Below, piece after piece: positions 23,457-52,231 of a stretch of DNA of 64,000 nucleotides (its first letter is position 1; every line of letters begins with the position of its first letter). The translations under genes were made by a program, and so were the position numbers. The notes beneath the pieces were generated by a model that saw nothing but the letters and a program-made list of their open reading frames with translations, made no database searches and was not told the DNA's origin. Origin of the DNA: Mytilus trossulus (lineage: Eukaryota); contig NC_086373.1 of NCBI RefSeq assembly GCF_036588685.1, positions 25,978,001 to 26,042,000 on the forward strand, read 5' to 3'.

Positions 23457-24128
23457 TCTAGCAAAGTATTCGGTAAAGTTGCAATTAAAAAAGTCCTCAA
23501 AACCTCTACTGAGTTTGAAGCTTTCCTCAGCCTCAAACACGAAAACATTGTCGAAGCCATTGAAATCATCGAAGCCGAAGAATTTGCCTTCGTTTTGATG
23601 GAATTCGCTGAATTCGGAGATGTTTTTGAATACATAATGAAAAACGGCCTCATGTCCGTTGAAGCCACCCTCTCTGTCTTCTCTCAAGTTGTCAAAGCAG
23701 TCGAATACTGCCACTCAAATGGAATCGCCCACAATGACATTAAATTAGAAAACGTCTTGTTATCTAATGGATGTGTCAAACTGGCTGATTTTGGATTTGC
23801 CAAATCAACCGTTATTGTTGCCGAATCTGAAGAATTTTGTGGAACCCTCCCATACGCTGCCCCCGAAGTCATTATGGGAATGGAACACAATACCATGAAA
23901 GCCGACATGTGGAGTATGGGAGTTATGCTTTACGTCATGCTCTTCGGAGCTTTCCCATTCTCCGATAGTGACGCAACCTCTATGGTCAAAGCTCAAATCT
24001 CAAACACCCTCTCTTTCCCCGAAAACACTAGCGACATCGTAAAATCCCTCGTCTCCTCCATGCTTGAACCCTCTGTTGAAAAACGTGCTGATGCCATCTC
24101 AGTCCGTCTTGCCTTGGGTCAGTTTTAA
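23457..24128 (+). pseudogene. TSSK-like kinase unit 1, 5'-truncated (no promoter, no ATG, first 22 codons missing)
   Basis: Homology starts at TCTAGC (codon 23); the ORF track start at 23454 is a TTG; carries E25K. Confidence 0.85.
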
Positions 24129-24355
24129 ATACCCAAGCATCCTTGAAATCGCAACAGGCTCCGTTATAGGATCTTGTTGTGATTTCAAGGATGTTTTTTT
24201 TTTGTCCATTCGATTGTTACGGTAAACCATGTATATATAACACTTGGGCATACCTTTATCCGATACAATATACGGTTACGGTAAACCTACGTGTTATCAA
24301 TCAATTTTACATTCTCATCTTCTTTGTTTCAACAAACTCATTCTATTTTCATTTT

Positions 24356-24361
24356 AATAAA
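24356..24361 (+). terminator. Polyadenylation signal AATAAA of the kinase unit (repeated in all 16 units)
   Basis: AATAAA ~228 nt after the stop codon, followed ~25 nt later by GT-rich TTGTTTGTTTTC. Confidence 0.7.
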
Positions 24362-24589
24362 CTTACTGTGACGTGAGTTAAGCATTGTTTGTTTTCTGAA
24401 AAACCTTGAATGGCTGCAGAGAAACAGAAAATTAGAACGCTCAAGTTACGACATAGTCTATTTATTAATTGTTATTCAAGTTTACCACTTGACCGCACAA
24501 TCCCGTAGCAAAGCAAGCTGTTTTCATAGGTTTGGGAAGAAAACAAGTTGACTCTAACAATCCTCTTACTTTCTTTGTATTGAGATTCG

Positions 24590-25110
24590 GGTTTGTAACC
24601 GATTCCATGTGGTTACGGTAAACAAGAATTTATGGTCAGTCCATAGTTATATATTTTGTTGAATCATGTTCTAATCCCAATAACTTAAATATATTAAAAG
24701 CACATAGAAAATGATTTCATCGGTTTACACTTAGCTTGCTGTGGTAAACATTGCATACGAGGATACGGTAAACTGAACTGTATAATAACTTGTTCGGTTA
24801 CGGTAAACCTTTATCGTATAAGTTTATGGTTACGGTAAACATGACAGTTAAAGGCAACACGGTAAACTTATAAGATAAATGCCCTTGTACAACCAATTAC
24901 TTTGTTTACCGTTTGCAAGAGTAGTTACCATTAATGAAAAGGGGAGATTGTTCAATAATGTACTGTTTCATTGTGTAAGAAAGCATTTATTTGAACTTTC
25001 CACCCTTCAGCATCAATCATTGGAACAGTCCGTAGCAGCCATATCTCTATATAAGGCGTGAATTTCAGTATTTTGATACCTTTATTACACTAAATCCACG
25101 CCAATTTAAA
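24590..25110 (+). promoter_or_regulatory. Kinase unit promoter: clustered (GGTT)ACGGTAAAC motifs and a TATA box (repeated before units 2-16)
   Basis: TATATAA at 25048-25054, 63 nt before the ATG; reverse CCAAT (ATTGG) ~25018; AAAATGG start context; multiple GTAAAC-core motifs at 24611-24912. Confidence 0.7.
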
Positions 25111-25848
25111 ATGGAACTTTTATTGAACAGTGGACTTTCAAACGTTGTAGCCCTAACTGAAGAAGTTTTCTCCGCCTCTAGCGAAGTATTCGGTAAAGTT
25201 GCAATTAAAAAAGTCCTCAAAACCTCTACTGAGTTTGAAGCTTTCCTCAGCCTCAAACACGAAAACATTGTCGAAGCCATTGAAATCATCGAAGCCGAAG
25301 AATTTGCCTTCGTTTTGATGGAATTCGCTGAATTCGGAGATGTTTTTGAATACATAATGAAAAACGGCCTCATGTCCGTTGAAGCCACCCTCTCTGTCTT
25401 CTCTCAAGTTGTCAAAGCAGTCGAATACTGCCACTCAAATGGAATCGCCCACAATGACATTAAATTAGAAAACGTCTTGTTATCTAATGGATGTGTCAAA
25501 CTGGCTGATTTTGGATTTGCCAAATCAACCGTTATTGTTGCCGAATCTGAAGAATTTTGTGGAACCCTCCCATACGCTGCCCCCGAAGTCATTATGGGAA
25601 TGGAACACAATACCATGAAAGCCGACATGTGGAGTATGGGAGTTATGCTTTACGTCATGCTCTTCGGAGCTTTCCCATTCTCCGATAGTGACGCAACCTC
25701 TATGGTCAAAGCTCAAATCTCAAACACCCTCTCTTTCCCCGAAAACACTAGCGACATCGTAAAATCCCTCGTCTCCTCCATGCTTGAACCCTCTGTTGAA
25801 AAACGTGCTGATGCCATCTCAGTCCGTCTTGCCTTGGGTCAGTTTTAA
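25111..25848 (+). CDS. Intronless TSSK-like (CAMK group) Ser/Thr kinase, 245 aa, unit 2
   Basis: VAIK, H.NIV, HNDIKLEN, DFG, FCGTLPYAAPE, DMWSMGVMLY and the subdomain XI Arg. The TSSK assignment is by eye (V.SA.SE, GD..EYI..NG, PF.DS...M...Q....FP). Confidence 0.9.
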   Translation: MELLLNSGLSNVVALTEEVFSASSEVFGKVAIKKVLKTSTEFEAFLSLKHENIVEAIEIIEAEEFAFVLMEFAEFGDVFEYIMKNGLMSVEATLSVFSQVVKAVEYCHSNGIAHNDIKLENVLLSNGCVKLADFGFAKSTVIVAESEEFCGTLPYAAPEVIMGMEHNTMKADMWSMGVMLYVMLFGAFPFSDSDATSMVKAQISNTLSFPENTSDIVKSLVSSMLEPSVEKRADAISVRLALGQF

Positions 25849-26821
25849 ATACCCAAGCATCCTTGAAATCGCAACAGGCTCCGTTATAGGATCTTGTTGT
25901 GATTTCAAGGATGTTTTTTTTTTGTCCATTCGATTGTTACGGTAAACCATGTATATAAAACACTTGGGCATACCTTTATCCGATACAATATACGGTTACG
26001 GTAAACCTAAGTGTTATCAATCAATTTTACATTCTCATCTTCTTTGTTTCAACAAACTCATTCTATTTTCATTTTAATAAACTTACTGTGACGTGAGTTA
26101 AGCATTGTTTGTTTTCTGAAAAACCTTGAATGGCTGCAGAGAAACAGAAAATTAGAACGCTCAAGTTACGACATAGTCTATTTATTAATTGTTATTCAAG
26201 TTTACCACTTGACCGCACAATCCCGTAGCAAAGCAAGCTGTTTTCATAGGTTTGGGAAGAAATGGAAAACAAGTTGACTCTAACAATCCTCTTACTTTCT
26301 TTGTATTGAGATTCGGGTTTGTAACCGATTCCATGTGGTTACGGTAAACAAGAATGTATGGTCAGTCCATAGTTATATATTTTGTTGAATCATGTTTAAA
26401 TATATTAAAAGCACATAGAAAATGATTTCATCGGTTTACACTTAGCTTGCTGTGGTAAACATTGCATACGAGGATACGGTAAACTGAACTGTATAATAAC
26501 TTGTTCGGTTACGGTAAACCTTTATCGTATAAGTTTATGGTTACGGTAAACATGACAGTTAAAGGCAACACGGTAAACTTATAAGATAAATGCCCTTGTA
26601 CAACCAATTACTTTGTTTACCGTTTGCAAGAGTAGTTACCATTAATGAAAAGGGGAGATTGTTCAATAATGTACTGTTTCATTGTGTAAGAAAGCATTTA
26701 TTTGAACTTTCCACCCTTCAGCATCAATCATTGGAACAGTCCGTAGCAGCCATATCTCTATATAAGGCGTGAATTTCAGTATTTTGATACCTTTATTACA
26801 CTAAATCCACGCCAATTTAAA

Positions 26822-27559
26822 ATGGAACTTTTATTGAACAGTGGACTTTCAAACGTTGTAGCCCTAACTGAAGAAGTTTTCTCCGCCTCTAGCGAAGTAT
26901 TCGGTAAAGTTGCAATTAAAAAAGTCCTCAAAACCTCTACTGAGTTTGAAGCTTTCCTCAGCCTCAAACACGAAAACATTGTCGAAGCCATTGAAATCAT
27001 CGAAGCCGAAGAATTTGCCTTCGTTTTGATGGAATTCGCTGAATTCGGAGATGTTTTTGAATACATAATGAAAAACGGCCTCATGTCCGTTGAAGCCACC
27101 CTCTCTGTCTTCTCTCAAGTTGTCAAAGCAGTCGAATACTGCCACTCAAATGGAATCGCCCACAATGACATTAAATTAGAAAACGTCTTGTTATCTAATG
27201 GATGTGTCAAACTGGCTGATTTTGGATTTGCCAAATCAACCGTTATTGTTGCCGAATCTGAAGAATTTTGTGGAACCCTCCCATACGCTGCCCCCGAAGT
27301 CATTATGGGAATGGAACACAATACCATGAAAGCCGACATGTGGAGTATGGGAGTTATGCTTTACGTCATGCTCTTCGGAGCTTTCCCATTCTCCGATAGT
27401 GACGCAACCTCTATGGTCAAAGCTCAAATCTCAAACACCCTCTCTTTCCCCGAAAACACTAGCGACATCGTAAAATCCCTCGTCTCCTCCATGCTTGAAC
27501 CCTCTGTTGAAAAACGTGCTGATGCCATCTCAGTCCGTCTTGCCTTGGGTCAGTTTTAA
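26822..27559 (+). CDS. TSSK-like kinase, unit 3
   Basis: Protein identical to unit 2. Confidence 0.9.
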   Translation: MELLLNSGLSNVVALTEEVFSASSEVFGKVAIKKVLKTSTEFEAFLSLKHENIVEAIEIIEAEEFAFVLMEFAEFGDVFEYIMKNGLMSVEATLSVFSQVVKAVEYCHSNGIAHNDIKLENVLLSNGCVKLADFGFAKSTVIVAESEEFCGTLPYAAPEVIMGMEHNTMKADMWSMGVMLYVMLFGAFPFSDSDATSMVKAQISNTLSFPENTSDIVKSLVSSMLEPSVEKRADAISVRLALGQF

Positions 27560-28532
27560 ATACCCAAGCATCCTTGAAATCGCAACAGGCTCCGTTATAG
27601 GATCTTGTTGTGATTTCAAGGATGGTTTTTTTTTGTCCATTCGATTGTTACGGTAAACCATGTATATAAAACACTTGGGCATACCTTTATCCGATACAAT
27701 ATACGGTTACGGTAAACCTAAGTGTTATCAATCAATTTTACATTCTCATCTTCTTTGTTTCAACAAACTCATTCTATTTTCATTTTAATAAACTTACTGT
27801 GACGTGAGTTAAGCATTGTTTGTTTTCTGAAAAACCTTGAATGGCTGCAGAGAAACAGAAAATTAGAACGCTCAAGTTACGACATAGTCTATTTATTAAT
27901 TGTTATTCAAGTTTACCACTTGACCGCACAATCCCGTAGCAAAGCAAGCTGTTTTCATAGGTTTGGGAAGAAATGGAAAACAAGTTGACTCTAACAATCC
28001 TCTTACTTTCTTTGTATTGAGATTCGGGTTTGTAACCGATTCCATGTGGTTACGGTAAACAAGAATGTATGGTCAGTCCATAGTTATATATTTTGTTGAA
28101 TCATGTTTAAATATATTAAAAGCACATAGAAAATGATTTCATCGGTTTACACTTAGCTTGCTGTGGTAAACATTGCATACGAGGATACGGTAAACTGAAC
28201 TGTATAATAACTTGTTCGGTTACGGTAAACCTTTATCGTATAAGTTTATGGTTACGGTAAACATGACAGTTAAAGGCAACACGGTAAACTTATAAGATAA
28301 ATGCCCTTGTACAACCAATTACTTTGTTTACCGTTTGCAAGAGTAGTTACCATTAATGAAAAGGGGAGATTGTTCAATAATGTACTGTTTCATTGTGTAA
28401 GAAAGCATTTATTTGAACTTTCCACCCTTCAGCATCAATCATTGGAACAGTCCGTAGCAGCCATATCTCTATATAAGGCGTGAATTTCAGTATTTTGATA
28501 CCTTTATTACACTAAATCCACGCCAATTTAAA

Positions 28533-29270
28533 ATGGAACTTTTATTGAACAGTGGACTTTCAAACGTTGTAGCCCTAACTGAAGAAGTTTTCTCCGCCTC
28601 TAGCGAAGTATTCGGTAAAGTTGCAATTAAAAAAGTCCTCAAAACCTCTACTGAGTTTGAAGCTTTCCTCAGCCTCAAACACGAAAACATTGTCGAAGCC
28701 ATTGAAATCATCGAAGCCGAAGAATTTGCCTTCGTTTTGATGGAATTCGCTGAATTCGGAGATGTTTTTGAATACATAATGAAAAACGGCCTCATGTCCG
28801 TTGAAGCCACCCTCTCTGTCTTCTCTCAAGTTGTCAAAGCAGTCGAATACTGCCACTCAAATGGAATCGCCCACAATGACATTAAATTAGAAAACGTCTT
28901 GTTATCTAATGGATGTGTCAAACTGGCTGATTTTGGATTTGCCAAATCAACCGTTATTGTTGCCGAATCTGAAGAATTTTGTGGAACCCTCCCATACGCT
29001 GCCCCCGAAGTCATTATGGGAATGGAACACAATACCATGAAAGCCGACATGTGGAGTATGGGAGTTATGCTTTACGTCATGCTCTTCGGAGCTTTCCCAT
29101 TCTCCGATAGTGACGCAACCTCTATGGTCAAAGCTCAAATCTCAAACACCCTCTCTTTCCCCGAAAACACTAGCGACATCGTAAAATCCCTCGTCTCCTC
29201 CATGCTTGAACCCTCTGTTGAAAAACGTGCTGATGCCATCTCAGTCCGTCTTGCCTTGGGTCAGTTTTAA
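28533..29270 (+). CDS. TSSK-like kinase, unit 4
   Basis: Protein identical to unit 2. Confidence 0.9.
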   Translation: MELLLNSGLSNVVALTEEVFSASSEVFGKVAIKKVLKTSTEFEAFLSLKHENIVEAIEIIEAEEFAFVLMEFAEFGDVFEYIMKNGLMSVEATLSVFSQVVKAVEYCHSNGIAHNDIKLENVLLSNGCVKLADFGFAKSTVIVAESEEFCGTLPYAAPEVIMGMEHNTMKADMWSMGVMLYVMLFGAFPFSDSDATSMVKAQISNTLSFPENTSDIVKSLVSSMLEPSVEKRADAISVRLALGQF

Positions 29271-30258
29271 ATACCCAAGCATCCTTGAAATCGCAACAGG
29301 CTCCGTTTTAGGATCTTGTTGTGATTTCAAGGATGTTTTTTTTTTGTCCATTCGATTGTTACGGTAAACCATGTATATATAACACTTGGGCATACCTTTA
29401 TCCGATACAATATACGGTTACGGTAAACCTAAGTGTTATCAATCAATTTTACATTCTCATCTTCTTTGTTTCAACAAACTCATTCTATTTTCATTTTAAT
29501 AAACTTACTGTGACGTGAGTTAAGCATTGTTTGTTTTCTGAAAAACCTTGAATGGCTGCAGAGAAACAGAAAATTAGAACGCTAAAGTTACGACATAGTC
29601 TATTTATTAATTGTTATTCAAGTTTACCACTTGACCGCACAATCCCGTAGCAAAGCAAGCTGTTTTCATAGGTTTGGGAAGAAATGGAAAACAAGTTGAC
29701 TCTAACAATCCTCTTACTTTCTTTGTATTGAGATTCGGGTTTGTAACCGATTCCATGTGGTTACGGTAAACAAGAATTTATGGTCAGTCCATAGTTATAT
29801 ATTTTGTTGAATCATGTTCTAATCCCAATAACTTAAATATATTAAAAGCACATAGAAAATGATTTCATCGGTTTACACTTAGCTTGCTGTGGTAAACATT
29901 GCATACGAGGATACGGTAAACTGAACTGTATAATAACTTGTTCGGTTACGGTAAACCTTTATCGTATAAGTTTATGGTTACGGTAAACATGACAGTTAAA
30001 GGCAACACGGTAAACTTATAAGATAAATGCCCTTGTACAACCAATTACTTTGTTTACCGTTTGCAAGAGTAGTTACCATTAATGAAAAGGGGAGATTGTT
30101 CAATAATGTACTGTTTCATTGTGTAAGAAAGCATTTATTTGAACTTTCCACCCTTCAGCATCAATCATTGGAACAGTCCGTAGCAGCCATATCTCTATAT
30201 AAGGCGTGAATTTCAGTATTTTGATACCTTTATTACACTAAATCCACGCCAATTTAAA

Positions 30259-30996
30259 ATGGAACTTTTAATGAACAGTGGACTTTCAAACGTTGTAGCC
30301 CTAACTGAAGAAGTTTTCTCCGCCTCTAGCGAAGTATTCGGTAAAGTTGCAATTAAAAAAGTCCTCAAAACCTCTACTGAGTTTGAAGCTTTCCTCAGCC
30401 TCAAACACGAAAACATTGTCGAAGCCATTGAAATCATCGAAGCCGAAGAATTTGCCTTCGTTTTGATGGAATTCGCTGAATTCGGAGATGTTTTTGAATA
30501 CATAATGAAAAACGGCCTCATGTCCGTTGAAGCCACCCTCTTTGTCTTCTCTCAAGTTGTCAAAGCAGTCGAATACTGCCACTCAAATGGAATCGCCCAC
30601 AATGACATTAAATTAGAAAACGTCTTGTTATCTAATGGATGTGTCAAACTGGCTGATTTTGGATTTGCCAAATCAACCGTTATTGTTGCCGAATCTGAAG
30701 AATTTTGTGGAACCCTCCCATACGCTGCCCCCGAAGTCATTATGGGAATGGAACACAATACCATGAAAGCCGACATGTGGAGTATGGGAGTTATGCTTTA
30801 CGTCATGCTCTTCGGAGCTTTCCCATTCTCCGATAGTGACGCAACCTCTATGGTCAAAGCTCAAATCTCAAACACCCTCTCTTTCCCCGAAAACACTAGC
30901 GACATCGTAAAATCCCTCGTCTCCTCCATGCTTGAACCCTCTGTTGAAAAACGTGCTGATGCCATCTCAGTCCGTCTTGCCTTGGGTCAGTTTTAA
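30259..30996 (+). CDS. TSSK-like kinase, unit 5 (L5M, S95F)
   Basis: Intact ORF with two missense changes. Confidence 0.9.
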   Translation: MELLMNSGLSNVVALTEEVFSASSEVFGKVAIKKVLKTSTEFEAFLSLKHENIVEAIEIIEAEEFAFVLMEFAEFGDVFEYIMKNGLMSVEATLFVFSQVVKAVEYCHSNGIAHNDIKLENVLLSNGCVKLADFGFAKSTVIVAESEEFCGTLPYAAPEVIMGMEHNTMKADMWSMGVMLYVMLFGAFPFSDSDATSMVKAQISNTLSFPENTSDIVKSLVSSMLEPSVEKRADAISVRLALGQF

Positions 30997-31984
30997 ATAC
31001 CCAAGCATCCTTGAAATCGCAACAGGCTCCGTTATAGGATCTTGTTGTGATTTCAAGGATGTTTTTTTTTTGTCCATTCGATTGTTACGGTAAACCATGT
31101 ATATATAACACTTGGGCATACCTTTATCCGATACAATATACGGTTACGGTAAACCTACGTGTTATCAATCAATTTTACATTCTCATCTTCTTTGTTTCAA
31201 CAAACTCATTCTATTTTCATTTTAATAAACTTACTGTGACGTGAGTTAAGCATTGTTTGTTTTCTGAAAAACCTTGAATGGCTGCAGAGAAACAGAAAAT
31301 TAGAACGCTCAAGTTACGACATAGTCTATTTATTAATTGTTATTCAAGTTTACCACTTGACCGCACAATCCCGTAGCAAAGCAAGCTGTTTTCATAGGTT
31401 TGGGAAGAAATGGAAAACAAGTTGACTCTAACAATCCTCTTACTTTCTTTGTATTGAGATTCGGGTTTGTAACCGATTCCATGTGGTTACGGTAAACAAG
31501 AATTTATGGTCAGTCCATAGTTATATATTTTGTTGAATCATGTTCTAATCCCAATAACTTAAATATATTAAAAGCACATAGAAAATGATTTCATCGGTTT
31601 ACACTTAGCTTGCTGTGGTAAACATTGCATACGAGGATACGGTAAACTGAACTGTATAATAACTTGTTCGGTTACGGTAAACCTTTATCGTATAAGTTTA
31701 TGGTTACGGTAAACATGACAGTTAAAGGCAACACGGTAAACTTATAAGATAAATGCCCTTGTACAACCAATTACTTTGTTTACCGTTTGCAAGAGTAGTT
31801 ACCATTAATGAAAAGGGGAGATTGTTCAATAATGTACTGTTTCATTGTGTAAGAAAGCATTTATTTGAACTTTCCACCCTTCAGCATCAATCATTGGAAC
31901 AGTCCGTAGCAGCCATATCTCTATATAAGGCGTGAATTTCAGTATTTTGATACCTTTATTACACTAAATCCACGCCAATTTAAA

Positions 31985-32722
31985 ATGGAACTTTTATTGA
32001 ACAGTGGACTTTCAAACGTTGTAGCCCTAACTGAAGAAGTTTTCTCCGCCTCTAGCGAAGTATTCGGTAAAGTTGCAATTAAAAAAGTCCTCAAAACCTC
32101 TACTGAGTTTGAAGCTTTCCTCAGCCTCAAACACGAAAACATTGTCGAAGCCATTGAAATCATCGAAGCCGAAGAATTTGCCTTCGTTTTGATGGAATTC
32201 GCTGAATTCGGAGATGTTTTTGAATACATAATGAAAAACGGCCTCATGTCCGTTGAAGCCACCCTCTCTGTCTTCTCTCAAGTTGTCAAAGCAGTCGAAT
32301 ACCGCCACTCAAATGGAATCGCCCACAATGACATTAAATTAGAAAACGTCTTGTTATCTAATGGATGTGTCAAACTGGCTGATTTTGGATTTGCCAAATC
32401 AACCGTTATTGTTGCCGAATCTGAAGAATTTTGTGGAACCCTCCCATACGCTGCCCCCGAAGTCATTATGGGAATGGAACACAATACCATGAAAGCCGAC
32501 ATGTGGAGTATGGGAGTTATGCTTTACGTCATGCTCTTCGGAGCTTTCCCATTCTCCGATAGTGACGCAACCTCTATGGTCAAAGCTCAAATCTCAAACA
32601 CCCTCTCTTTCCCCGAAAACACTAGCGACATCGTAAAATCCCTCGTCTCCTCCATGCTTGAACCCTCTGTTGAAAAACGTGCTGATGCCATCTCAGTCCG
32701 TCTTGCCTTGGGTCAGTTTTAA
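31985..32722 (+). CDS. TSSK-like kinase, unit 6 (C107R)
   Basis: Intact ORF; YCH becomes YRH. Confidence 0.88.
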   Translation: MELLLNSGLSNVVALTEEVFSASSEVFGKVAIKKVLKTSTEFEAFLSLKHENIVEAIEIIEAEEFAFVLMEFAEFGDVFEYIMKNGLMSVEATLSVFSQVVKAVEYRHSNGIAHNDIKLENVLLSNGCVKLADFGFAKSTVIVAESEEFCGTLPYAAPEVIMGMEHNTMKADMWSMGVMLYVMLFGAFPFSDSDATSMVKAQISNTLSFPENTSDIVKSLVSSMLEPSVEKRADAISVRLALGQF

Positions 32723-33711
32723 ATACCCAAGCATCCTTGAAATCGCAACAGGCTCCGTTATAGGATCTTGTTGTGATTTCAAGGATGTTTTTTTTTTTGT
32801 CCATTCGATTGTTACGGTAAACCATGTATATATAACACTTGGGCATACCTTTATCCGATACAATATACGGTTACGGTAAACCTACGTGTTATCAATCAAT
32901 TTTACATTCTCATCTTCTTTGTTTCAACAAACTCATTCTATTTTCATTTTAATAAACTTACTGTGACGTGAGTTAAGCATTGTTTGTTTTCTGAAAAACC
33001 TTGAATGGCTGCAGAGAAACAGAAAATTAGAACGCTCAAGTTACGACATAGTCTATTTATTAATTGTTATTCAAGTTTACCACTTGACCGCACAATCCCG
33101 TAGCAAAGCAAGCTGTTTTCATAGGTTTGGGAAGAAATGGAAAACAAGTTGACTCTAACAATCCTCTTACTTTCTTTGTATTGAGATTCGGGTTTGTAAC
33201 CGATTCCATGTGGTTACGGTAAACAAGAATTTATGGTCAGTCCATAGTTATATATTTTGTTGAATCATGTTCTAATCCCAATAACTTAAATATATTAAAA
33301 GCACATAGAAAATGATTTCATCGGTTTACACTTAGCTTGCTGTGGTAAACATTGCATACGAGGATACGGTAAACTGAACTGTATAATAACTTGTTCGGTT
33401 ACGGTAAACCTTTATCGTATAAGTTTATGGTTACGGTAAACATGACAGTTAAAGGCAACACGGTAAACTTATAAGATAAATGCCCTTGTACAACCAATTA
33501 CTTTGTTTACCGTTTGCAAGAGTAGTTACCATTAATGAAAAGGGGAGATTGTTCAATAATGTACTGTTTCATTGTGTAAGAAAGCATTTATTTGAACTTT
33601 CCACCCTTCAGCATCAATCATTGGAACAGTCCGTAGCAGCCATATCTCTATATAAGGCGTGAATTTCAGTATTTTGATACCTTTATTACACTAAATCCAC
33701 GCCAATTTAAA

Positions 33712-34449
33712 ATGGAACTTTTATTGAACAGTGGACTTTCAAACGTTGTAGCCCTAACTGAAGAAGTTTTCTCCGCCTCTAGCGAAGTATTCGGTAAAGT
33801 TGCAATTAAAAAAGTCCTCAAAACCTCTACTGAGTTTGAAGCTTTCCTCAGCCTCAAACACGAAAACATTGTCGAAGCCATTGAAATCATCGAAGCCGAA
33901 GAATTTGCCTTCGTTTTGATGGAATTCGCTGAATTCGGAGATGTTTTTGAATACATAATGAAAAACGGCCTCATGTCCGTTGAAGCCACCCTCTCTGTCT
34001 TCTCTCAAGTTGTCAAAGCAGTCGAATACTGCCACTCAAATGGAATCGCCCACAATGACATTAAATTAGAAAACGTCTTGTTATCTAATGGATGTGTCAA
34101 ACTGGCTGATTTTGGATTTGCCAAATCAACCGTTATTGTTGCCGAATCTGAAGAATTTTGTGGAACCCTCCCATACGCTGCCCCCGAAGTCATTATGGGA
34201 ATGGAACACAATACCATGAAAGCCGACATGTGGAGTATGGGAGTTATGCTTTACGTCATGCTCTTCGGAGCTTTCCCATTCTCCGATAGTGACGCAACCT
34301 CTATGGTCAAAGCTCAAATCTCAAACACCCTCTCTTTCCCCGAAAACACTAGCGACATCGTAAAATCCCTCGTCTCCTCCATGCTTGAACCCTCTGTTGA
34401 AAAACGTGCTGATGCCATCTCAGTCCGTCTTGCCTTGGGTCAGTTTTAA
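33712..34449 (+). CDS. TSSK-like kinase, unit 7
   Basis: Protein identical to unit 2. Confidence 0.9.
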   Translation: MELLLNSGLSNVVALTEEVFSASSEVFGKVAIKKVLKTSTEFEAFLSLKHENIVEAIEIIEAEEFAFVLMEFAEFGDVFEYIMKNGLMSVEATLSVFSQVVKAVEYCHSNGIAHNDIKLENVLLSNGCVKLADFGFAKSTVIVAESEEFCGTLPYAAPEVIMGMEHNTMKADMWSMGVMLYVMLFGAFPFSDSDATSMVKAQISNTLSFPENTSDIVKSLVSSMLEPSVEKRADAISVRLALGQF

Positions 34450-35424
34450 ATACCCAAGCATCCTTGAAATCGCAACAGGCTCCGTTATAGGATCTTGTTG
34501 TGATTTCAAGGATGTTTTTTTTTTGTCCATTCGATTGTTACGGTAAACCATGTATATATAACACTTGGGCATACCTTTATCCGATACAATATACGGTTAC
34601 GGTAAACCTAAGTGTTATCAATCAATTTTACATTCTCATCTTCTTTGTTTCAACAAACTCATTCTATTTTCATTTTAATAAACTTACTGTGACGTGAGTT
34701 AAGCATTGTTTGTTTTCTGAAAAACCTTGAATGGCTGCAGAGAAACAGAAAATTAGAACGCTCAAGTTACGACATAGTCTATTTATTAATTGTTATTCAA
34801 GTTTACCACTTGACCGCGCAATCCCGTAGCAAAGCAAGCTGTTTTCATAGGTTTGGGAAGAAATGGAAAACAAGTTGACTCTAACAATCCTCTTACTTTC
34901 TTTGTATTGAGATTCGGGTTTGTAACCGATTCCATGTGGTTACGGTAAACAAGAATTTATGGTCAGTCCATAGTTATATATTTTGTTGAATCATGTTCTA
35001 ATCCCAATAACTTAAATATATTAAAAGCACATAGAAAATGATTTCATCGGTTTACACTTAGCTTGCTGTGGTAAACATTGCATACGAGGATACGGTAAAC
35101 TGAACTGTATAATAACTTGTTCGGTTACGGTAAACCTTTATCGTATAAGTTTATGGTTACGGTAAACATGACACGGTAAACTTATAAGATAAATGCCCTT
35201 GTACAACCAATTACTTTGTTTACCGTTTGCAAGAGTAGTTACCATTAATGAAAAGGGGAGATTGTTCAATAATGTACTGTTTCATTGTGTAAGAAAGCAT
35301 TTATTTGAACTTTCCACCCTTCAGCATCAATCATTGGAACAGTCCGTAGCAGCCATATCTCTATATAAGGCGTGAATTTCAGTATTTTGATACCTTTATT
35401 ACACTAAATCCACGCCAATTTAAA

Positions 35425-36162
35425 ATGGAACTTTTATTGAACAGTGGACTTTCAAACGTTGTAGCCCTAACTGAAGAAGTTTTCTCCGCCTCTAGCGAAG
35501 TATTCGGTAAAGTTGCAATTAAAAAAGTCCTCAAAACCTCTACTGAGTTTGAAGCTTTCCTCAGCCTCAAACACGAAAACATTGTCGAAGCCATTGAAAT
35601 CATCGAAGCCGAAGAATTTGCCTTCGTTTTGATGGAATTCGCTGAATTCGGAGATGTTTTTGAATACATAATGAAAAACGGCCTCATGTCCGTTGAAGCC
35701 ACCCTCTCTGTCTTCTCTCAAGTTGTCAAAGCAGTCGAATACTGCCACTCAAATGGAATCGCCCACAATGACATTAAATTAGAAAACGTCTTGTTATCTA
35801 ATGGATGTGTCAAACTGGCTGATTTTGGATTTGCCAAATCAACCGTTATTGTTGCCGAATCTGAAGAATTTTGTGGAACCCTCCCATACGCTGCCCCCGA
35901 AGTCATTATGGGAATGGAACACAATACCATGAAAGCCGACATGTGGAGTATGGGAGTTATGCTTTACGTCATGCTCTTCGGAGCTTTCCCATTCTCCGAT
36001 AGTGACGCAACCTCTATGGTCAAAGCTCAAATCTCAAACACCCTCTCTTTCCCCGAAAACACTAGCGACATCGTAAAATCCCTCGTCTCCTCCATGCTTG
36101 AACCCTCTGTTGAAAAACGTGCTGATGCCATCTCAGTCCGTCTTGCATTGGGTCAGTTTTAA
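35425..36162 (+). CDS. TSSK-like kinase, unit 8
   Basis: Protein identical; synonymous GCC>GCA at Ala241. Confidence 0.9.
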   Translation: MELLLNSGLSNVVALTEEVFSASSEVFGKVAIKKVLKTSTEFEAFLSLKHENIVEAIEIIEAEEFAFVLMEFAEFGDVFEYIMKNGLMSVEATLSVFSQVVKAVEYCHSNGIAHNDIKLENVLLSNGCVKLADFGFAKSTVIVAESEEFCGTLPYAAPEVIMGMEHNTMKADMWSMGVMLYVMLFGAFPFSDSDATSMVKAQISNTLSFPENTSDIVKSLVSSMLEPSVEKRADAISVRLALGQF

Positions 36163-37149
36163 ATACCCAAGCATCCTTGAAATCGCAACAGGCTCCGTTA
36201 TAGGATCTTGTTGTGATTTCAAGGATGTTTTTTTTTGTCCATTCGATTGTTACGGTAAACCATGTATATATAACACTTGGGCATACCTTTATCCGATACA
36301 ATATACGGTTACGGTAAACCTAAGTGTTATCAATCAATTTTACATTCTCATCTTCTTTGTTTCAACAAACTCATTCTATTTTCATTTTAATAAACTTACT
36401 GTGACGTGAGTTAAGCATTGTTTGTTTTCTGAAAAACCTTGAATGGCTGCAGAGAAACAGAAAATTAGAACGCTCAAGTTACGACATAGTCTATTTATTA
36501 ATTGTTATTCAAGTTTACCACTTGACCGCACAATCCCGTAGCAAAGCAAGCTGTTTTCATAGGTTTGGGAAGAAATGGAAAACAAGTTGACTCTAACAAT
36601 CCTCTTACTTTCTTTGTATTGAGATTCGGGTTTGTAACCGATTCCATGTGGTTACGGTAAACAAGAATTTATGGTCAGTCCATAGTTATATATTTTGTTG
36701 AATCATGTTCTAATCCCAATAACTTAAATATATTAAAAGCACATAGAAAATGATTTCATCGGTTTACACTTAGCTTGCTGTGGTAAACATTGCATACGAG
36801 GATACGGTAAACTGAACTGTATAATAACTTGTTCGGTTACGGTAAACCTTTATCGTATAAGTTTATGGTTACGGTAAACATGACAGTTAAAGGCAACACG
36901 GTAAACTTATAAGATAAATGCCCTTGTACAACCAATTACTTTGTTTACCGTTTGCAAGAGTAGTTACCATTAATGAAAAGGGGAGATTGTTCAATAATGT
37001 ACTGTTTCATTGTGTAAGAAAGCATTTATTTGAACTTTCCACCCTTCAGCATCAATCATTGGAACAGTCCGTAGCAGCCATATCTCTATATAAGGCGTGA
37101 ATTTCAGTATTTTGATACCTTTATTACACTAAATCCACGCCAATTTAAA

Positions 37150-37887
37150 ATGGAACTTTTATTGAACAGTGGACTTTCAAACGTTGTAGCCCTAACTGAA
37201 GAAGTTTTCTCCGCCTCTAGCGAAGTATTCGGTAAAGTTGCAATTAAAAAAGTCCTCAAAACCTCTACTGAGTTTGAAGCTTTCCTCAGCCTCAAACACG
37301 AAAACATTGTCGAAGCCATTGAAATCATCGAAGCCGAAGAATTTGCCTTCGTTTTGATGGAATTCGCTGAATTCGGAGATGTTTTTGAATACATAATGAA
37401 AAACGGCCTCATGTCCGTTGAAGCCACCCTCTCTGTCTTCTCTCAAGTTGTCAAAGCAGTCGAATACTGCCACTCAAATGGAATCGCCCACAATGACATT
37501 AAATTAGAAAACGTCTTGTTATCTAATGGATGTGTCAAACTGGCTGATTTTGGATTTGCCAAATCAACCGTTATTGTTGCCGAATCTGAAGAATTTTGTG
37601 GAACCCTCCCATACGCTGCCCCCGAAGTCATTATGGGAATGGAACACAATACCATGAAAGCCGACATGTGGAGTATGGGAGTTATGCTTTACGTCATGCT
37701 CTTCGGAGCTTTCCCATTCTCCGATAGTGACGCAACCTCTATGGTCAAAGCTCAAATCTCAAACACCCTCTCTTTCCCCGAAAACACTAGCGACATCGTA
37801 AAATCCCTCGTCTCCTCCATGCTTGAACCCTCTGTTGAAAAACGTGCTGATGCCATCTCAGTCCGTCTTGCCTTGGGTCAGTTTTAA
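37150..37887 (+). CDS. TSSK-like kinase, unit 9
   Basis: Protein identical to unit 2. Confidence 0.9.
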   Translation: MELLLNSGLSNVVALTEEVFSASSEVFGKVAIKKVLKTSTEFEAFLSLKHENIVEAIEIIEAEEFAFVLMEFAEFGDVFEYIMKNGLMSVEATLSVFSQVVKAVEYCHSNGIAHNDIKLENVLLSNGCVKLADFGFAKSTVIVAESEEFCGTLPYAAPEVIMGMEHNTMKADMWSMGVMLYVMLFGAFPFSDSDATSMVKAQISNTLSFPENTSDIVKSLVSSMLEPSVEKRADAISVRLALGQF

Positions 37888-38875
37888 ATACCCAAGCATC
37901 CTTGAAATCGCAACAGGCTCCGTTATAGGATCTTGTTGTGATTTCAAGGATGTTTTTTTTTTGTCCATTCGATTGTTACGGTAAACCATGTATATATAAC
38001 ACTTGGGCATACCTTTATCCGATACAATATACGGTTACGGTAAACCTACGTGTTATCAATCAATTTTACATTCTCATCTTCTTTGTTTCAACAAACTCAT
38101 TCTATTTTCATTTTAATAAACTTACTGTGACGTGAGTTAAGCATTGTTTGTTTTCTGAAAAACCTTGAATGGCTGCAGAGAAACAGAAAATTAGAACGCT
38201 CAAGTTACGACATAGTCTATTTATTAATTGTTATTCAAGTTTACCACTTGACCGCACAATCCCGTAGCAAAGCAAGCTGTTTTCATAGGTTTGGGAAGAA
38301 ATGGAAAACAAGTTGACTCTAACAATCCACTTACTTTCTTTGTATTGAGATTCGGGTTTGTAACCGATTCCATGTGGTTACGGTAAACAAGAATTTATGG
38401 TCAGTCCATAGTTATATATTTTGTTGAATCATGTTCTAATCCCAATAACTTAAATATATTAAAAGCACATAGAAAATGATTTCATCGGTTTACACTTAGC
38501 TTGCTGTGGTAAACATTGCATACGAGGATACGGTAAACTGAACTGTATAATAACTTGTTCGGTTACGGTAAACCTTTATCGTATAAGTTTATGGTTACGG
38601 TAAACATGACAGTTAAAGGCAACACGGTAAACTTATAAGATAAATGCCCTTGTACAACCAATTACTTTGTTTACCGTTTGCAAGAGTAGTTACCAATAAT
38701 GAAAAGGGGAGATTGTTCAATAATGTACTGTTTCATTGTGTAAGAAAGCATTTATTTGAACTTTCCACCCTTCAGCATCAATCATTGGAACAGTCCGTAG
38801 CAGCCATATCTCTATATAAGGCGTGAATTTCAGTATTTTGATACCTTTATTACACTAAATCCACGCCAATTTAAA

Positions 38876-39600
38876 ATGGAACTTTTATTGAACAGTGGAC
38901 TTTCAAACGTTGTAGCCCTAACTGAAGAAGTTTTCTCCGCCTCTAGCGAAGTATTCGGTAAAGTTGCAATTAAAAAAGTCCTCAAAACCTCTACTGAGTT
39001 TGAAGCTTTCCTCAGCCTCAAACACGAAAACATTGTCGAAGCCATTGAAATCATCGAAGCCGAAGAATTTGCCTTCGTTTTGATGGAATTCGCTGAATTC
39101 GGAGATGTTTTTGAATACATAATGAAAAACGGCCTCATGTCCGTTGAAGCCACCCTCTCTGTGTCAAAGCAGTCGAATACTGCCACTCAAATGGAATCGC
39201 CCACAATGACATTAAATTAGAAAACGTCTTGTTATCTAATGGATGTGTCAAACTGGCTGATTTTGGATTTGCCAAATCAACCGTTATTGTTGCCGAATCT
39301 GAAGAATTTTGTGGAACCCTCCCATACGCTGCCCCCGAAGTCATTATGGGAATGGAACACAATACCATGAAAGCCGACATGTGGAGTATGGGAGTTATGC
39401 TTTACGTCATGCTCTTCGGAGCTTTCCCATTCTCCGATAGTGACGCAACCTCTATGGTCAAAGCTCAAATCTCAAACACCCTCTCTTTCCCCGAAAACAC
39501 TAGCGACATCGTAAAATCCCTCGTCTCCTCCATGCTTGAACCCTCTGTTGAAAAACGTGCTGATGCCATCTCAGTCCGTCTTGCCTTGGGTCAGTTTTAA
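38876..39600 (+). pseudogene. TSSK-like kinase unit 10, frameshifted
   Basis: 13-bp deletion (CTTCTCTCAAGTT) at ~39162; span is 725 bp versus 738 bp. Confidence 0.9.
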
Positions 39601-40576
39601 ATACCCAAGCATCCTTGAAATCGCAACAGGCTCCGTTATAGGATCTTGTTGTGATTTCAAGGATGTTTTTTTTTTTGTCCATTCGATTGTTACGGTAAAC
39701 CATGTATATATAACACTTGGGCATACCTTTATCCGATACAATATACGGTTACGGTAAACCTACGTGTTATCAATCAATTTTACATTCTCATCTTCTTTGT
39801 TTCAACAAACTCATTCTATTTTCATTTTAATAAACTTACTGTGACGTGAGTTAAGCATTGTTTGTTTTCTGAAAAACCTTGAATGGCTGCAGAGAAACAG
39901 AAAATTAGAACGCTCAAGTATTTATTAATTGTTATTCAAGTTTACCACTTGACCGCACAATCCCGTAGCAAAGCAAGCTGTTTTCATAGGTTTGGGAAGA
40001 AATGGAAAACAAGTTGACTCTAACAATCCTCTTACTTTCTTTGTATTGAGATTCGGGTTTGTAACCGATTCCATGTGGTTACGGTAAACAAGAATTTATG
40101 GTCAGTCCATAGTTATATATTTTGTTGAATCATGTTCTAATCCCAATAACTTAAATATATTAAAAGCACATAGAAAATGATTTCATCGGTTTACACTTAG
40201 CTTGCTGTGGTAAACATTGCATACTAGGATACGGTAAACTGAACTGTATAATAACTTGTTCGGTTACGGTAAACCTTTATCGTATAAGTTTATGGTTACG
40301 GTAAACATGACAGTTAAAGGCAACACGGTAAACTTATAAGATAAATGCCCTTGTACAACCAATTACTTTGTTTACCGTTTGCAAGAGTAGTTACCATTAA
40401 TGAAAAGGGGAGATTGTTCAATAATGTACTGTTTCATTGTGTAAGAAAGCATTTATTTGAACTTTCCACCCTTCAGCATCAATCATTGGAACAGTCCGTA
40501 GCAGCCATATCTCTATATAAGGCGTGAATTTCAGTATTTTGATACCTTTATTACACTAAATCCACGCCAATTTAAA

Positions 40577-41314
40577 ATGGAACTTTTATTGAACAGTGGA
40601 CTTTCAAACGTTGTAGCCCTAACTGAAGAAGTTTTCTCCGCCTCTAGCGAAGTATTCGGTAAAGTTGCAATTAAAAAAGTCCTCAAAACCTCTACTGAGT
40701 TTGAAGCTTTCCTCAGCCTCAAACACGAAAACATTGTCGAAGCCATTGAAATCATCGAAGCCGAAGAATTTGCCTTCGTTTTGATGGAATTCGCTGAATT
40801 CGGAGATGTTTTTGAATACATAATGAAAAACGGCCTCATGTCCGTTGAAGCCACCCTCTCTGTCTTCTCTCAAGTTGTCAAAGCAGTCGAATACTGCCAC
40901 TCAAATGGAATCGCCCACAATGACATTAAATTAGAAAACGTCTTGTTATCTAATGGATGTGTCAAACTGGCTGATTTTGGATTTGCCAAATCAACCGTTA
41001 TTGTTGCCGAATCTGAAGAATTTTGTGGAACCCTCCCATACGCTGCCCCCGAAGTCATTATGGGAATGGAACACAATACCATGAAAGCCGACATGTGGAG
41101 TATGGGAGTTATGCTTTACGTCATGCTCTTCGGAGCTTTCCCATTCTCCGATAGTGACGCAACCTCTATGGTCAAAGCTCAAATCTCAAACACCCTCTCT
41201 TTCCCCGAAAACACTAGCGACATCGTAAAATCCCTCGTCTCCTCCATGCTTGAACCCTCTGTTGAAAAACGTGCTGATGCCATCTCAGTCCGTCTTGCCT
41301 TGGGTCAGTTTTAA
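40577..41314 (+). CDS. TSSK-like kinase, unit 11
   Basis: Protein identical to unit 2. Confidence 0.9.
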   Translation: MELLLNSGLSNVVALTEEVFSASSEVFGKVAIKKVLKTSTEFEAFLSLKHENIVEAIEIIEAEEFAFVLMEFAEFGDVFEYIMKNGLMSVEATLSVFSQVVKAVEYCHSNGIAHNDIKLENVLLSNGCVKLADFGFAKSTVIVAESEEFCGTLPYAAPEVIMGMEHNTMKADMWSMGVMLYVMLFGAFPFSDSDATSMVKAQISNTLSFPENTSDIVKSLVSSMLEPSVEKRADAISVRLALGQF

Positions 41315-42302
41315 ATACCCAAGCATCCTTGAAATCGCAACAGGCTCCGTTATAGGATCTTGTTGTGATTTCAAGGATGTTTTTTTTTTGTCCATTCGAT
41401 TGTTACGGTAAACCATGTATATATAACACTTGGGCATACCTTTATCCGATACAATATACGGTTACGGTAAACCTACGTGTTATCAATCAATTTTACATTC
41501 TCATCTTCTTTGTTTCAACAAACTCATTCTATTTTCATTTTAATAAACTTACTGTGACGTGAGTTAAGCATTGTTTGTTTTCTGAAAAACCTTGAATGGC
41601 TGCAGAGAAACAGAAAATTAGAACGCTCAAGTTACGACATAGTCTATTTATTAATTGTTATTCAAGTTTACCACTTGACCGCACAATCCCGTAGCAAAGC
41701 AAGCTGTTTTCATAGGTTTGGGAAGAAATGGAAAACAAGTTGACTCTAACAATCCTCTTACTTTCTTTGTATTGAGATTCGGGTTTGTAACCGATTCCAT
41801 GTGGTTACGGTAAACAAGAATTTATGGTCAGTCCATAGTTATATATTTTGTTGAATCATGTTCTAATCCCAATAACTTAAATATATTAAAAGCACATAGA
41901 AAATGATTTCATCGGTTTACACTTAGCTTGCTGTGGTAAACATTGCATACTAGGATACGGTAAACTGAACTGTATAATAACTTGTTCGGTTACGGTAAAC
42001 CTTTATCGTATAAGTTTATGGTTACGGTAAACATGACAGTTAAAGGCAACACGGTAAACTTATAAGATAAATGCCCTTGTACAACCAATTACTTTGTTTA
42101 CCGTTTGCAAGAGTAGTTACCATTAATGAAAAGGGGAGATTGTTCAATAATGTACTGTTTCATTGTGTAAGAAAGCATTTATTTGAACTTTCCACCCTTC
42201 AGCATCAATCATTGGAACAGTCCGTAGCAGCCATATCTCTATATAAGGCGTGAATTTCAGTATTTTGATACCTTTATTACACTAAATCCACGCCAATTTA
42301 AA

Positions 42303-51793: not shown

Positions 51794-52231
51794 AAAAACG
51801 GCCTCATGTCTGTTGAAGCCACCCTCTCTGTCTTCTCTCAAGTTGTCAAAGCAGTCGAATACTGCCACTCAAATGGAATCGCCCACAATGACATTAAATT
51901 AGAAAACGTCTTGTTATCTAATGGATGTGTCAAACTGGCTGATTTTGGATTTGCCAAATCAACCCTTGTTGTTGCCGAATCTGAAGAATTTTGTGGAACA
52001 CAATACCACGAAAGCCGACATGTGGAGTATGGGAGTTATGCTCTACTTGATGCTCTTATAGTGACGCAACCTCTAGACTCAAATCTCAAACACCCTCTCT
52101 TTCCCTGAAGTTTTCCATCTCTAACGAAGTATTCCGTAAAGTTGCAATTAAAAAAGTTTAAAGCTTTCCTCCTCTTCAAACACGAAAACATTGTCAAAGC
52201 CATTGAAATCATCGAAGCCGAAGAATTTGCC
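51794..52231 (+). pseudogene. Decayed, rearranged kinase remnant (C-terminal part followed by N-terminal part)
   Basis: 51794-52107 covers KNGLM..LSFP with several deletions; 52105-52231 covers EVF..EEFA with substitutions and a deletion. Confidence 0.9.

What the first reader, a model, noticed from the sequence alone, without database searches (positions are those of the whole stretch)
25111..25848. Paired HRD-to-HND and activation-loop Thr-to-Glu changes suggest a phosphorylation-independent kinase
Seen: the catalytic loop is H114-N115-D116-IKLEN and the activation segment reads AESEEFCGTLPYAAPE. Knowledge: TSSK/AMPK/MARK kinases have a phospho-acceptor Thr in the S.TFCGS-type motif, which is bound by the HRD Arg. 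Here E148 (25552-25554) occupies that position and the Arg is gone, while K33, D116, K118, N121, DFG, APE and R232 are retained. Inference: the on/off switch has been removed, so output would scale with protein amount, which would make copy number the control variable.
Basis: partly seen in the sequence, partly recalled or inferred. Interest (0 to 1): 0.8.

Follow-up and report, generated by a model that had tools for sequence, protein, structure and literature searches.

The report
Mussel kinase with hard-wired activation loop
A mussel (Mytilus) gene present in about 58 tandem copies encodes a very small, very acidic sperm-kinase-like enzyme whose usual phosphorylation on/off site is permanently replaced by glutamate; this is a known kind of rewiring in an undescribed family, and neither activity nor expression has been shown.

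Summary
ORF 25111-25848 (+) encodes a 245-aa protein kinase domain with H114-N115-D116-IKLEN and DFG...AESEEFCGTLPYAAPE. Three independent alignments put E148 (25552-25554) on the T-loop Thr of MARK/TSSK kinases.

The changes are a family trait. All 18 diverged relatives (58-98% identical) have Glu at 148 and no Arg at 115. Position 115 drifts (N/S/C/G), so "HRD-to-HND" is only the local state. Among 62 other CAMK/TSSK-like relatives, 55 keep HRD and 48 keep Thr/Ser.

The gene is functional. dN/dS is 0.14-0.18 between the three arrays in this genome (about 58 units), and all catalytic residues are invariant.

Best reading: a non-RD, pre-activated minimal kinase that cannot use the canonical T-loop switch. 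The design is known from PhK-gamma (Glu182) and NIK.

Four caveats:
- The Gly-rich loop is replaced by a conserved TEEVFS, so it could be a pseudokinase.
- S146 and T152 are invariant possible phospho-sites.
- The whole protein has become acidic (pI 4.5, against about 8.8 in relatives).
- Expression was not shown.

"Copy number as the control variable" is untested. The scan had already noted the arrays on other DNA of this genome.

The parts
25111..25848 (+). Intronless 245-aa kinase ORF (unit 2 of the array). It is the kinase domain only.
   Evidence: ORF. Pfam Pkinase 1.5e-51. AlphaFold2 model pLDDT 94.5, pTM 0.91. The conserved start MEF/LL is shared by all 245-aa relatives.
25450..25473 (+). 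Catalytic loop H114-N115-D116-I-K118-L-E-N121. It is non-RD: the Arg is replaced by Asn (codon AAT).
   Evidence: In the family, position 115 is N/S/C/G and never R. It is R in 55 of 62 other relatives.
25552..25554 (+). E148 (GAA) at the canonical T-loop phospho-Thr position.
   Evidence: Aligned to the Thr of LDTFCGS in MARK3/4. The column is E in 18 of 18 family members and T/S in 48 of 62 others.
25507..25587 (+). Activation segment from DFG to APE: DFGFAKSTVIVAESEEFCGTLPYAAPE. It includes K138 (25522-25524), S146 (25546-25548) and T152 (25564-25566).
   Evidence: S146 and T152 are invariant and K138 is kept in 17 of 18 family members. Model pLDDT is about 81 for residues 141-150.
25153..25176 (+). 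Remnant of the Gly-rich loop, L15-T-E-E-V-F-S-A22, aligned to IGEGSYAT of TSSKs. The glycines are lost, but the sequence is conserved within the family.
   Evidence: T16, E17 and E18 are each kept in 17 of 18 members. The model keeps a beta1-turn-beta2 hairpin (strands 9-14 and 19-24).
25207..25233 (+). VAIK Lys K33 to alphaC Glu E41. The beta3-alphaC linker is shortened: 7 residues lie between K33 and E41.
   Evidence: K33 and E41 are invariant in the family. The alphaC helix is modelled at 40-47.
25048..25056 (+). TATATAAGG, the putative TATA box, 62 nt upstream of the ATG.
   Evidence: It is kept at -61 in the C3 and C4 arrays, although their spacers have diverged. The function is inferred.
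26076..26081 (+). AATAAA, the putative poly(A) signal, 228 nt after the stop codon.
   Evidence: This is inferred. It is not conserved at the same place in C3/C4.
24615..24912 (.). Upstream cluster of the 9-mer ACGGTAAAC (6 of the 8 copies per unit), a candidate cis-regulatory motif.
   Evidence: 122 matches in the window against 0.3 expected, all inside the array. The C3/C4 spacers keep 7-9 copies despite spacer divergence.
23457..50471 (+). Tandem array of 16 units (1701-1727 bp). Thirteen full 245-aa ORFs are intact and 10 of these are identical in DNA. Two are broken: a 13-bp deletion at 38876-39600 and E145* at 45729-46466. The first unit is cut at its 5' end.

Best explanation
The ORF encodes a member of a mussel-specific clade of minimal (245 aa), strongly acidic, non-RD protein kinases of the CAMK group (TSSK-like).

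The canonical activation-loop switch is hard-wired. The phospho-acceptor Thr is a fixed Glu (E148). The RD arginine that would need neutralising is gone. The rest of the catalytic machinery (K33, E41, D116, K118, N121, DFG, T152, APE, R232) is kept by selection.

The enzyme therefore most likely folds directly into an active-like state without phosphorylation at the canonical T-loop site, in the manner of PhK-gamma (Glu182) and non-RD kinases such as NIK. Its output would then be set by other means: transcription from the promoter carried in each unit, protein amount, partners, or phosphorylation at S146 or T152.

Shown: the sequence anatomy, family-wide conservation, purifying selection, the three homogenised arrays, and a confident kinase fold.

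Inferred: catalytic activity, constitutive activity, a salt bridge of E148 to K138 or K37, germline expression, and any role of copy number.
For: - E148 aligns to the T-loop Thr in three alignments.
- In the family, 18 of 18 members have E148 and 18 of 18 are non-R. In the 62 others, R occurs in 55 and T/S in 48.
- Among the non-family relatives, non-R goes with absence of T/S (Fisher p = 0.0003, not corrected for relatedness). P0043 and P0049 carry an apparently separate case of HND with an acidic loop.
- The sister clade (P0024, 43% identity) still has GEGSFG, HRD and the T-loop Thr.
- Canonical TSSKs in the same genome keep GxGxY[AS], HRD and [RK]T[YF]CGS.
- All 16 key residues are invariant, although only 32% of family columns are invariant.
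- dN/dS is 0.14 (C1 against C3) and 0.175 (C1 against C4), at dS 0.26.
- The AlphaFold2 model has pLDDT 94.5 and pTM 0.91, with a complete five-strand N-lobe. Its best structural matches are SIK3, AMPK and MARK, with TM 0.82-0.85.
- Literature: TSSKs require T-loop Thr phosphorylation (PMC7401350). Non-RD kinases are commonly regulated by other means and NIK is constitutively active (PMC3431628). PhK-gamma Glu182 replaces the phospho-Thr and gives a constitutively active conformation (PMC10978961).
Against: - No activity data exist.
- The Gly-rich loop has lost G1, G2 and G3 (T16, E18, S21), with two acidic residues at its tip. That is common in pseudokinases and could weaken ATP binding.
- In PhK-gamma the Glu pairs with the RD Arg. 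Here that Arg is absent, so what holds E148 invariant is unknown.
- S146 and T152 are invariant and could be regulatory phospho-sites.
- The T-to-E and R-to-N changes may be by-products of a protein-wide shift to negative charge: net -13 to -22, pI 4.4-5.0, against a median of 8.8 in relatives.
- Transcription was not demonstrated. Only contigs could be laid, and some of them span unit junctions as DNA would.
- AlphaFold2 tends to give active-like kinase models whatever the regulation.
Confidence: 0.55

Rival explanations
1. It is a pseudokinase or scaffold. The fold and the catalytic-looking residues are kept, but the degenerate acidic Gly-rich loop (TEEVFS), the shortened beta2-beta3 hairpin and the short alphaC prevent productive ATP binding. 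The protein would act by binding, for example to very basic partners, and the fixed acidic activation loop would be a binding surface rather than a switch replacement.
For: - All three glycines of GxGxxG are lost, and the TEE tip is conserved in 17 of 18 members.
- The Pfam match covers only profile positions 44-254 of 263.
- The protein is strongly acidic.
Against: - K33, E41, D116, K118, N121, D133-F-G, T152, APE and R232 are all invariant across a family in which 68% of columns vary.
- None of the three residues used to predict pseudokinases (VAIK Lys, HxD Asp, DFG Asp) is missing.
- The adenine-pocket residues L15, A31, M70 and L123 are present in the sequence.
Confidence: 0.22
2. It is an active kinase that is still phospho-regulated. 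The canonical Thr is gone, but the invariant S146 (two residues before E148) or T152 takes over as the regulatory site, by autophosphorylation or an upstream kinase. The on/off switch would then have been moved, not removed.
For: - S146 and T152 are invariant in 18 of 18 members.
- Ser at the -2 position is also common in TSSK relatives (26 of 62).
Against: - Without the RD Arg there is little basic pocket left for a phosphate to neutralise.
- T152 is the general GT/GS residue of the P+1 loop, conserved in nearly all kinases for structural reasons (S in 42 and T in 19 of the 62 others). Its invariance therefore says little.
- The loop already carries three fixed acidic residues.
Confidence: 0.15
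3. The substitutions have no regulatory meaning. The array is a decaying or selfish amplified retrocopy, and the changes are drift in a gene that is not under selection for kinase function.
For: - Two of the 15 full units are broken, one by a 13-bp deletion and one by E145*. Three of the four other point changes within the array are non-synonymous.
- Expression was not shown.
Against: - dN/dS is 0.14-0.18 between arrays at dS 0.26.
- The 245-aa ORF length and all catalytic residues are kept in relatives down to 58% pairwise identity.
- The window copy groups with an M. edulis protein (98% identity) rather than with the other arrays of its own genome. The lineage therefore predates the species split.
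- The TATA box and the motif cluster are retained across diverged spacers.
Confidence: 0.05

Closest known systems
Phosphorylase kinase gamma subunit (PhK-gamma, CAMK group)
   Same: A Glu (Glu182) sits at the activation-loop position of the phospho-Thr and gives an active conformation without phosphorylation (PMC10978961). E148 occupies the same column here.
   Different: In PhK-gamma the Glu ion-pairs with the RD Arg148. Here the Arg is lost (N/S/C/G), so the partner of E148 is unknown. PhK-gamma has an intact Gly-rich loop, a regulatory C-terminal domain and regulatory subunits. This protein is a bare 245-aa domain.
Non-RD kinases, e.g. NIK (HGD)
   Same: The catalytic Asp is not preceded by Arg. 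NIK's kinase domain is active without activation-loop phosphorylation (PMC3431628).
   Different: NIK belongs to a different group (MAP3K). Its active state is held by an N-terminal extension that this protein lacks, and NIK keeps a normal Gly-rich loop.
Canonical TSSK kinases (TSSK1/2/3/4/6), including the mussel's own at G000 C3:38.696 Mb and C7:52.837 Mb
   Same: These are the best named sequence relatives, at 33-41% identity. The genes are small and intronless. The DFGFA[KR] and CG[ST]xxYAAPE motifs are shared, as is an A/S in place of the third glycine.
   Different: TSSKs need T-loop Thr phosphorylation (PMC7401350). They have GxGxY[AS]KV and HRD, are basic (pI 8.5-9.2 in this genome) and are 270-370 aa long. 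The tree does not place the mussel family inside the arthropod TSSK clade; the base is unresolved. The published M. edulis testis kinase TSTK1 is the canonical gene, not this family.
MARK/AMPK/SIK (CAMKL) kinase domains
   Same: These are the best solved-structure matches by sequence (MARK3/4, E 6.6e-39) and by fold (SIK3, AMPK, MARK, TM 0.82-0.85).
   Different: They are RD kinases switched on by LKB1 at the T-loop Thr. They carry UBA or regulatory domains and have an intact Gly-rich loop.

Membership tests
Eukaryotic protein kinase domain (Pfam PF00069) | Profile match above the gathering score | tested here: met
   175.8 bits against a cut-off of 31.7, E 1.5e-51. Only profile positions 44-254 are matched.
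Eukaryotic protein kinase domain (Pfam PF00069) | Catalytic residues: VAIK Lys, alphaC Glu, HxD Asp, catalytic-loop Asn, DFG Asp, APE Glu, subdomain XI Arg | tested here: met
   K33, E41, D116, N121, D133, E159 and R232 are invariant in the family.
Eukaryotic protein kinase domain (Pfam PF00069) | Gly-rich loop GxGxxG | tested here: not met
   The aligned segment is T16-E-E18-V-F-S21, with no glycine. The hairpin is still modelled.
TSSK family (CAMK group) | Falls inside the TSSK clade in a tree | tested here: inconclusive
   The family is one clade (SH-aLRT 100) on a long stem (0.99), next to the P0024 clade (89, with a long-branch warning). Its relation to the arthropod TSSK clade is unresolved. 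No vertebrate TSSK sequences were in the tree.
TSSK family (CAMK group) | T-loop Thr whose phosphorylation is required for activity | tested here: not met
   Glu at that column in 18 of 18 members. The requirement is stated in PMC7401350.
TSSK family (CAMK group) | Expression specific to the testis or post-meiotic germ cells | not testable with these tools
No paper was found on this family.
Non-RD kinases | Catalytic Asp not preceded by Arg | tested here: met
   H-N-D here, and N/S/C/G across the family.
PhK-gamma-type pre-activated kinases | Acidic residue at the activation-loop phospho-site | tested here: met
   E148 is invariant.
PhK-gamma-type pre-activated kinases | That acidic residue ion-pairs with the RD Arg | tested here: not met
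   There is no Arg at 115. The possible partners K138 and K37 are inferred only, because model coordinates are not readable with these tools.
Pseudokinases (sequence criterion: loss of the VAIK Lys, HxD Asp or DFG Asp) | At least one of the three residues missing | tested here: not met
   All three are invariant. The degenerate Gly-rich loop keeps the question open. It can be settled only by an ATP-binding or activity assay.

The most novel reading that the evidence does not exclude
The family is a dosage-driven germline enzyme: a constitutively active, switchless minimal kinase whose cellular output is set by how many array units are transcribed. About 58 self-contained cassettes on three chromosomes are kept alike by concerted evolution. 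On this reading it would be an ampliconic male-germline gene family, as seen in other animals under sexual or intragenomic conflict, and its strong negative charge would be tuned to very basic sperm chromatin proteins.
Probability: 0.12. Interest if true: 0.75.

Novelty: new variant of a known kind. Interest (0 to 1): 0.45.

Why it matters
If the protein is active, it would be one of the smallest complete eukaryotic-type protein kinases. It would also be a natural case in which the activation-loop switch was removed on both sides (acceptor and RD Arg) while the Glu stayed fixed. That asks what the Glu does when its classical partner is gone.

It would also show that a kinase can work with an acidic, glycine-free nucleotide loop.

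The three homogenised arrays make the family a convenient system for testing whether gene dosage replaces post-translational control. If it is a pseudokinase instead, the interest shifts to why about 58 copies are kept under purifying selection.

Either way, the RefSeq name 'TSSK3-like' hides these features. The 275-aa and 360-aa gene models are annotation artefacts.

Tried and rejected
- **Spliced gene with a missing N-terminal exon: rejected.** All relatives start at the same MEF/LL. The in-frame upstream stretch contains the TATA box and a stop codon in the window copy (25059-25061). The 275-aa RefSeq models start at an ATG upstream of the TATA box. The AlphaFold2 model has a complete N-lobe.
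- **Identity with the published M. edulis testis kinase TSTK1 (PMC3144882): rejected.** Its qPCR primer is absent from the window. It matches the canonical TSSK at C3:38.696 Mb with one mismatch.
- **Pseudogene array: rejected** on dN/dS of 0.14-0.18.
- **dN/dS within the array: not informative.** Ten of 15 full ORFs are identical, and pi is 0.09% in the ORF against 0.24% in the spacer.
- **Test of R-loss against T/S-loss on phylogenetically independent pairs: no power.** There are only 2 pairs on supported branches.
- **Expression: unresolved.** The look-up of sequencing runs and read laying returned only Logan contigs. Contigs of X2 and X5 begin at 25089 and 25080, about 30-40 nt after the TATA box, but contigs cannot show transcript starts. 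The X1 and X15 contigs cross the unit junction as DNA would.
The source organisms and the DNA of the 67-82% relatives and of the sister clade P0024 therefore could not be obtained.
- **Literature: nothing on this family.** Six library searches found no paper on this family or on the arrays.
- **Not used:** the large representative-protein search, because no claim here rests on absence of relatives.

Full report
**1. What is at the coordinates**

The window contains no N. Positions 25111-25848 (+) are an uninterrupted ORF of 245 codons. The protein matches Pfam Pkinase at E 1.5e-51, but only over profile positions 44-254 of 263.

- HNDIKLEN at 25450-25473.
- DFGFAKSTVIVAESEEFCGTLPYAAPE at 25507-25587.
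- E148 = GAA at 25552-25554 and N115 = AAT.

**2. Register**

phmmer against solved structures gives MARK3/MARK4 as best hits (E 6.6e-39). It aligns the query's SEEFCGT with LDTFCGS, so E148 falls on the T-loop Thr. Two MAFFT alignments, of 24 and 80 sequences, give the same column. The refutation 'alignment places E148 elsewhere' therefore does not apply.

**3. The changes are a family trait**

The word-index protein search found a tight family of proteins, nearly all 242-246 aa. The named members are Mytilus trossulus, M. edulis, M. galloprovincialis and M. coruscus ('TSSK', 'TSSK3-like'). There are also unnamed ENA and Logan sequences down to 67% identity to the query. After these there is a gap to 43% (the P0024 cluster) and 33-41% (arthropod TSSKs).

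In 18 family members (pairwise identity down to 58%, 32% of columns invariant):
- Position 148 is always E.
- Position 147 is E, D or Q.
- S146 and T152 are always kept.
- Position 115 is N (4), S (4), C (9) or G (1), and never R.

N, C and G are each one base change from a Ser AGY codon, and the window codon is AAT. This is consistent with an early Arg-to-Ser loss followed by drift. That order of events is inference.

In the other 62 relatives, R occurs in 55 and T/S in 48. Six of the seven non-R relatives lack T/S (Fisher p = 0.0003, not corrected for relatedness). The test on phylogenetically independent pairs has no power. P0043 and P0049 show an apparently separate case of HND with an acidic loop.

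The sister cluster P0024 keeps GEGSFG, HRD and the Thr. The mussel's own canonical TSSKs also keep the classical motifs:
- C3:38.696 Mb has GSGSYS, HRD and LSRTYCGS.
- C7:52.837 Mb has GEGTYA, HRD and LSKTFCGS.

**4. The gene is functional**

The unit repeats 16 times in the window (23457-50471, period 1701-1727 bp, 97-100% identity). Of the 15 full-length ORFs, 10 are identical, 1 carries a synonymous change and 2 carry missense changes. The remaining 2 are broken, one by a 13-bp deletion in the 38876 unit and one by E145* in the 45729 unit.

The genome's contig lengths equal those of the M. trossulus records. It has two more arrays: about 30 units on C3 and about 12 on C4. Nothing else is closer than 37% identity.

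Between arrays, dN/dS is 0.14 (C1 against C3) and 0.175 (C1 against C4), at dS 0.26.

The window copy groups with an M. edulis protein (98% identity) rather than with its own genome's C3/C4 copies. The lineages therefore predate the species split and are homogenised within arrays.

Each unit has the following features:
- A TATATAAGG at -62, kept at -61 in C3/C4.
- Eight copies of ACGGTAAAC (122 in the window against 0.3 expected), with 7-9 kept in the diverged C3/C4 spacers.
- An AATAAA 228 nt after the stop codon.

**5. Structure**

AlphaFold2 on the 80-sequence alignment gives pLDDT 94.5 and pTM 0.91. The N-lobe is complete with five strands (9-14, 19-24, 28-36, 56-62, 65-71) and a short alphaC (40-47). 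The activation loop is ordered, at about pLDDT 81. Foldseek's best matches are SIK3, AMPK and MARK, with TM 0.82-0.85. Model coordinates cannot be read with these tools, so the contacts of E148 are not known.

**6.

(a) The segment aligned to the Gly-rich loop, IGEGSYAT in TSSKs, is LTEEVFSA. All three glycines are gone, and T16, E17 and E18 are each conserved in 17 of 18 members. The beta2-beta3 hairpin and the beta3-alphaC linker are also shortened.

(b) The whole family is strongly acidic: pI 4.4-5.0 and net charge -13 to -22. The median pI of the 62 relatives is 8.8, and this genome's canonical TSSKs are at 8.5-9.2. R115 loss and T148E both go in that direction.

(c) In PhK-gamma the Glu works by pairing with the RD Arg (PMC10978961). 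Here the Arg is gone, yet the Glu is invariant while position 115 drifts. E148 is therefore held by some other constraint. K138 (the DFGFAK lysine, kept in 17 of 18) and K37 (17 of 18) are candidate partners by analogy with PKA K189 and H87. That is my inference from general knowledge.

**7. Mechanism**

I commit to a catalytically competent, non-RD kinase that does not use, and cannot use, the canonical T-loop phospho-switch. Its loop is held by fixed acidic residues (confidence 0.55). The supporting principles come from the literature:
- TSSKs need T-loop Thr phosphorylation (PMC7401350).
- Non-RD kinases are usually regulated otherwise, and NIK is constitutively active (PMC3431628).

Rivals:
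- Pseudokinase or binding protein (0.22), because of the glycine-free acidic loop.
- Switch moved to S146 or T152 (0.15).
- Drift in a non-functional amplified copy (0.05), contradicted by the selection data.

'Copy number as the control variable' is a further inference with no data. Each unit does carry its own promoter-like elements. However, transcription, translation, stability and partners are equally open as controls.

**8. Expression**

Expression could not be shown. The runs found are Logan contigs only. In X1 and X15, contigs cross the unit junction, as DNA would. X5 is a true RNA library and covers 24719-25867. X2 and X5 have contigs beginning at 25089 and 25080, but contigs cannot define transcript ends.

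No paper on this family was found. The M. edulis 'TSTK1' of PMC3144882 is the canonical TSSK on C3, not this gene.

**9. Comparison and novelty**

The design (non-RD, with an acidic residue at the phospho-site) is textbook, so the principle is not new. This family combines it with five further features, and the held library has no description of the combination:
- Loss of the Arg partner.
- A conserved glycine-free acidic nucleotide loop.
- A 245-aa minimal domain.
- Global acidification.
- About 58 tandem copies.

I rate it a new variant of a known kind, with interest 0.45. Earlier notes of this scan on other DNA of the same genome had already described the three arrays, the selection on them and the minimised N-lobe. 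I re-derived those points independently here.

Noticed in passing
window 24215-24912, and every spacer from 23457 to 50471: The 9-mer ACGGTAAAC, which contains a forkhead-like GTAAAC core, occurs 8 times per unit. There are 122 copies in the window against 0.3 expected, all inside the array. The copy number (7-9) is kept in the C3 and C4 array spacers, which are otherwise only 23-70% alignable.
   Followed up: partly
whole ORF 25111-25848 and all family members: The family is strongly acidic (pI 4.4-5.0, net charge -13 to -22). The 62 TSSK/CAMK relatives have a median pI of 8.8. This suggests adaptation to very basic partners or substrates.
   Followed up: partly
window 38876-39600 and 45729-46466: Two array units are broken. 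One has a 13-bp deletion after ORF nucleotide 286. The other has a G-to-T change that makes E145 a stop. Units at 30259 (L5M, S95F) and 31985 (C107R) carry missense changes.
   Followed up: yes
window 51794-52231: Three short, rearranged fragments of the kinase ORF (nt 250-455, 491-554 and 122-198) lie about 1.3 kb beyond the 3' end of the array.
   Followed up: no
window 21063-22212; 53764-54367; 61192-61696: Satellite-like tandem repeats with periods of 135/261 and 161 bp lie directly 5' of the array. Others with periods of 161 and 169 bp lie 3' of it.
   Followed up: no
window 4610-5062 (+); 174-1451 (-): One ORF has an MBT repeat (Pfam E 5.8e-19), probably an exon of an L3MBTL-like gene. 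Another ORF has weak, below-threshold endonuclease/reverse-transcriptase similarity and is probably a retroelement remnant.
   Followed up: partly
P0123/P0124 (275 aa) and P0001 (360 aa); window 25021-25110: The 275-aa RefSeq models of the C3/C4-type genes start at an ATG upstream of the TATA box, and that frame has a stop in the window copy. The M. coruscus 360-aa model fuses parts of two units. Both look like annotation artefacts.
   Followed up: yes
L035 (G000 C3:38695800-38697400), L036 (C7:52836400-52838000): Canonical intronless TSSK genes are present in the same genome. L035 matches the published M. edulis TSTK1 qPCR primer with one mismatch, so it is the testis kinase described in the literature.
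   Followed up: yes
L037/L038 (G000 C7:55.26 and 55.29 Mb): A pair of short kinase paralogues carries HRDITPSN in place of HRDxKxxN and has no Thr/Ser at the T-loop position (LLCDDFLGN). This is another divergent small kinase lineage, related to the Patella protein P0044.
   Followed up: no
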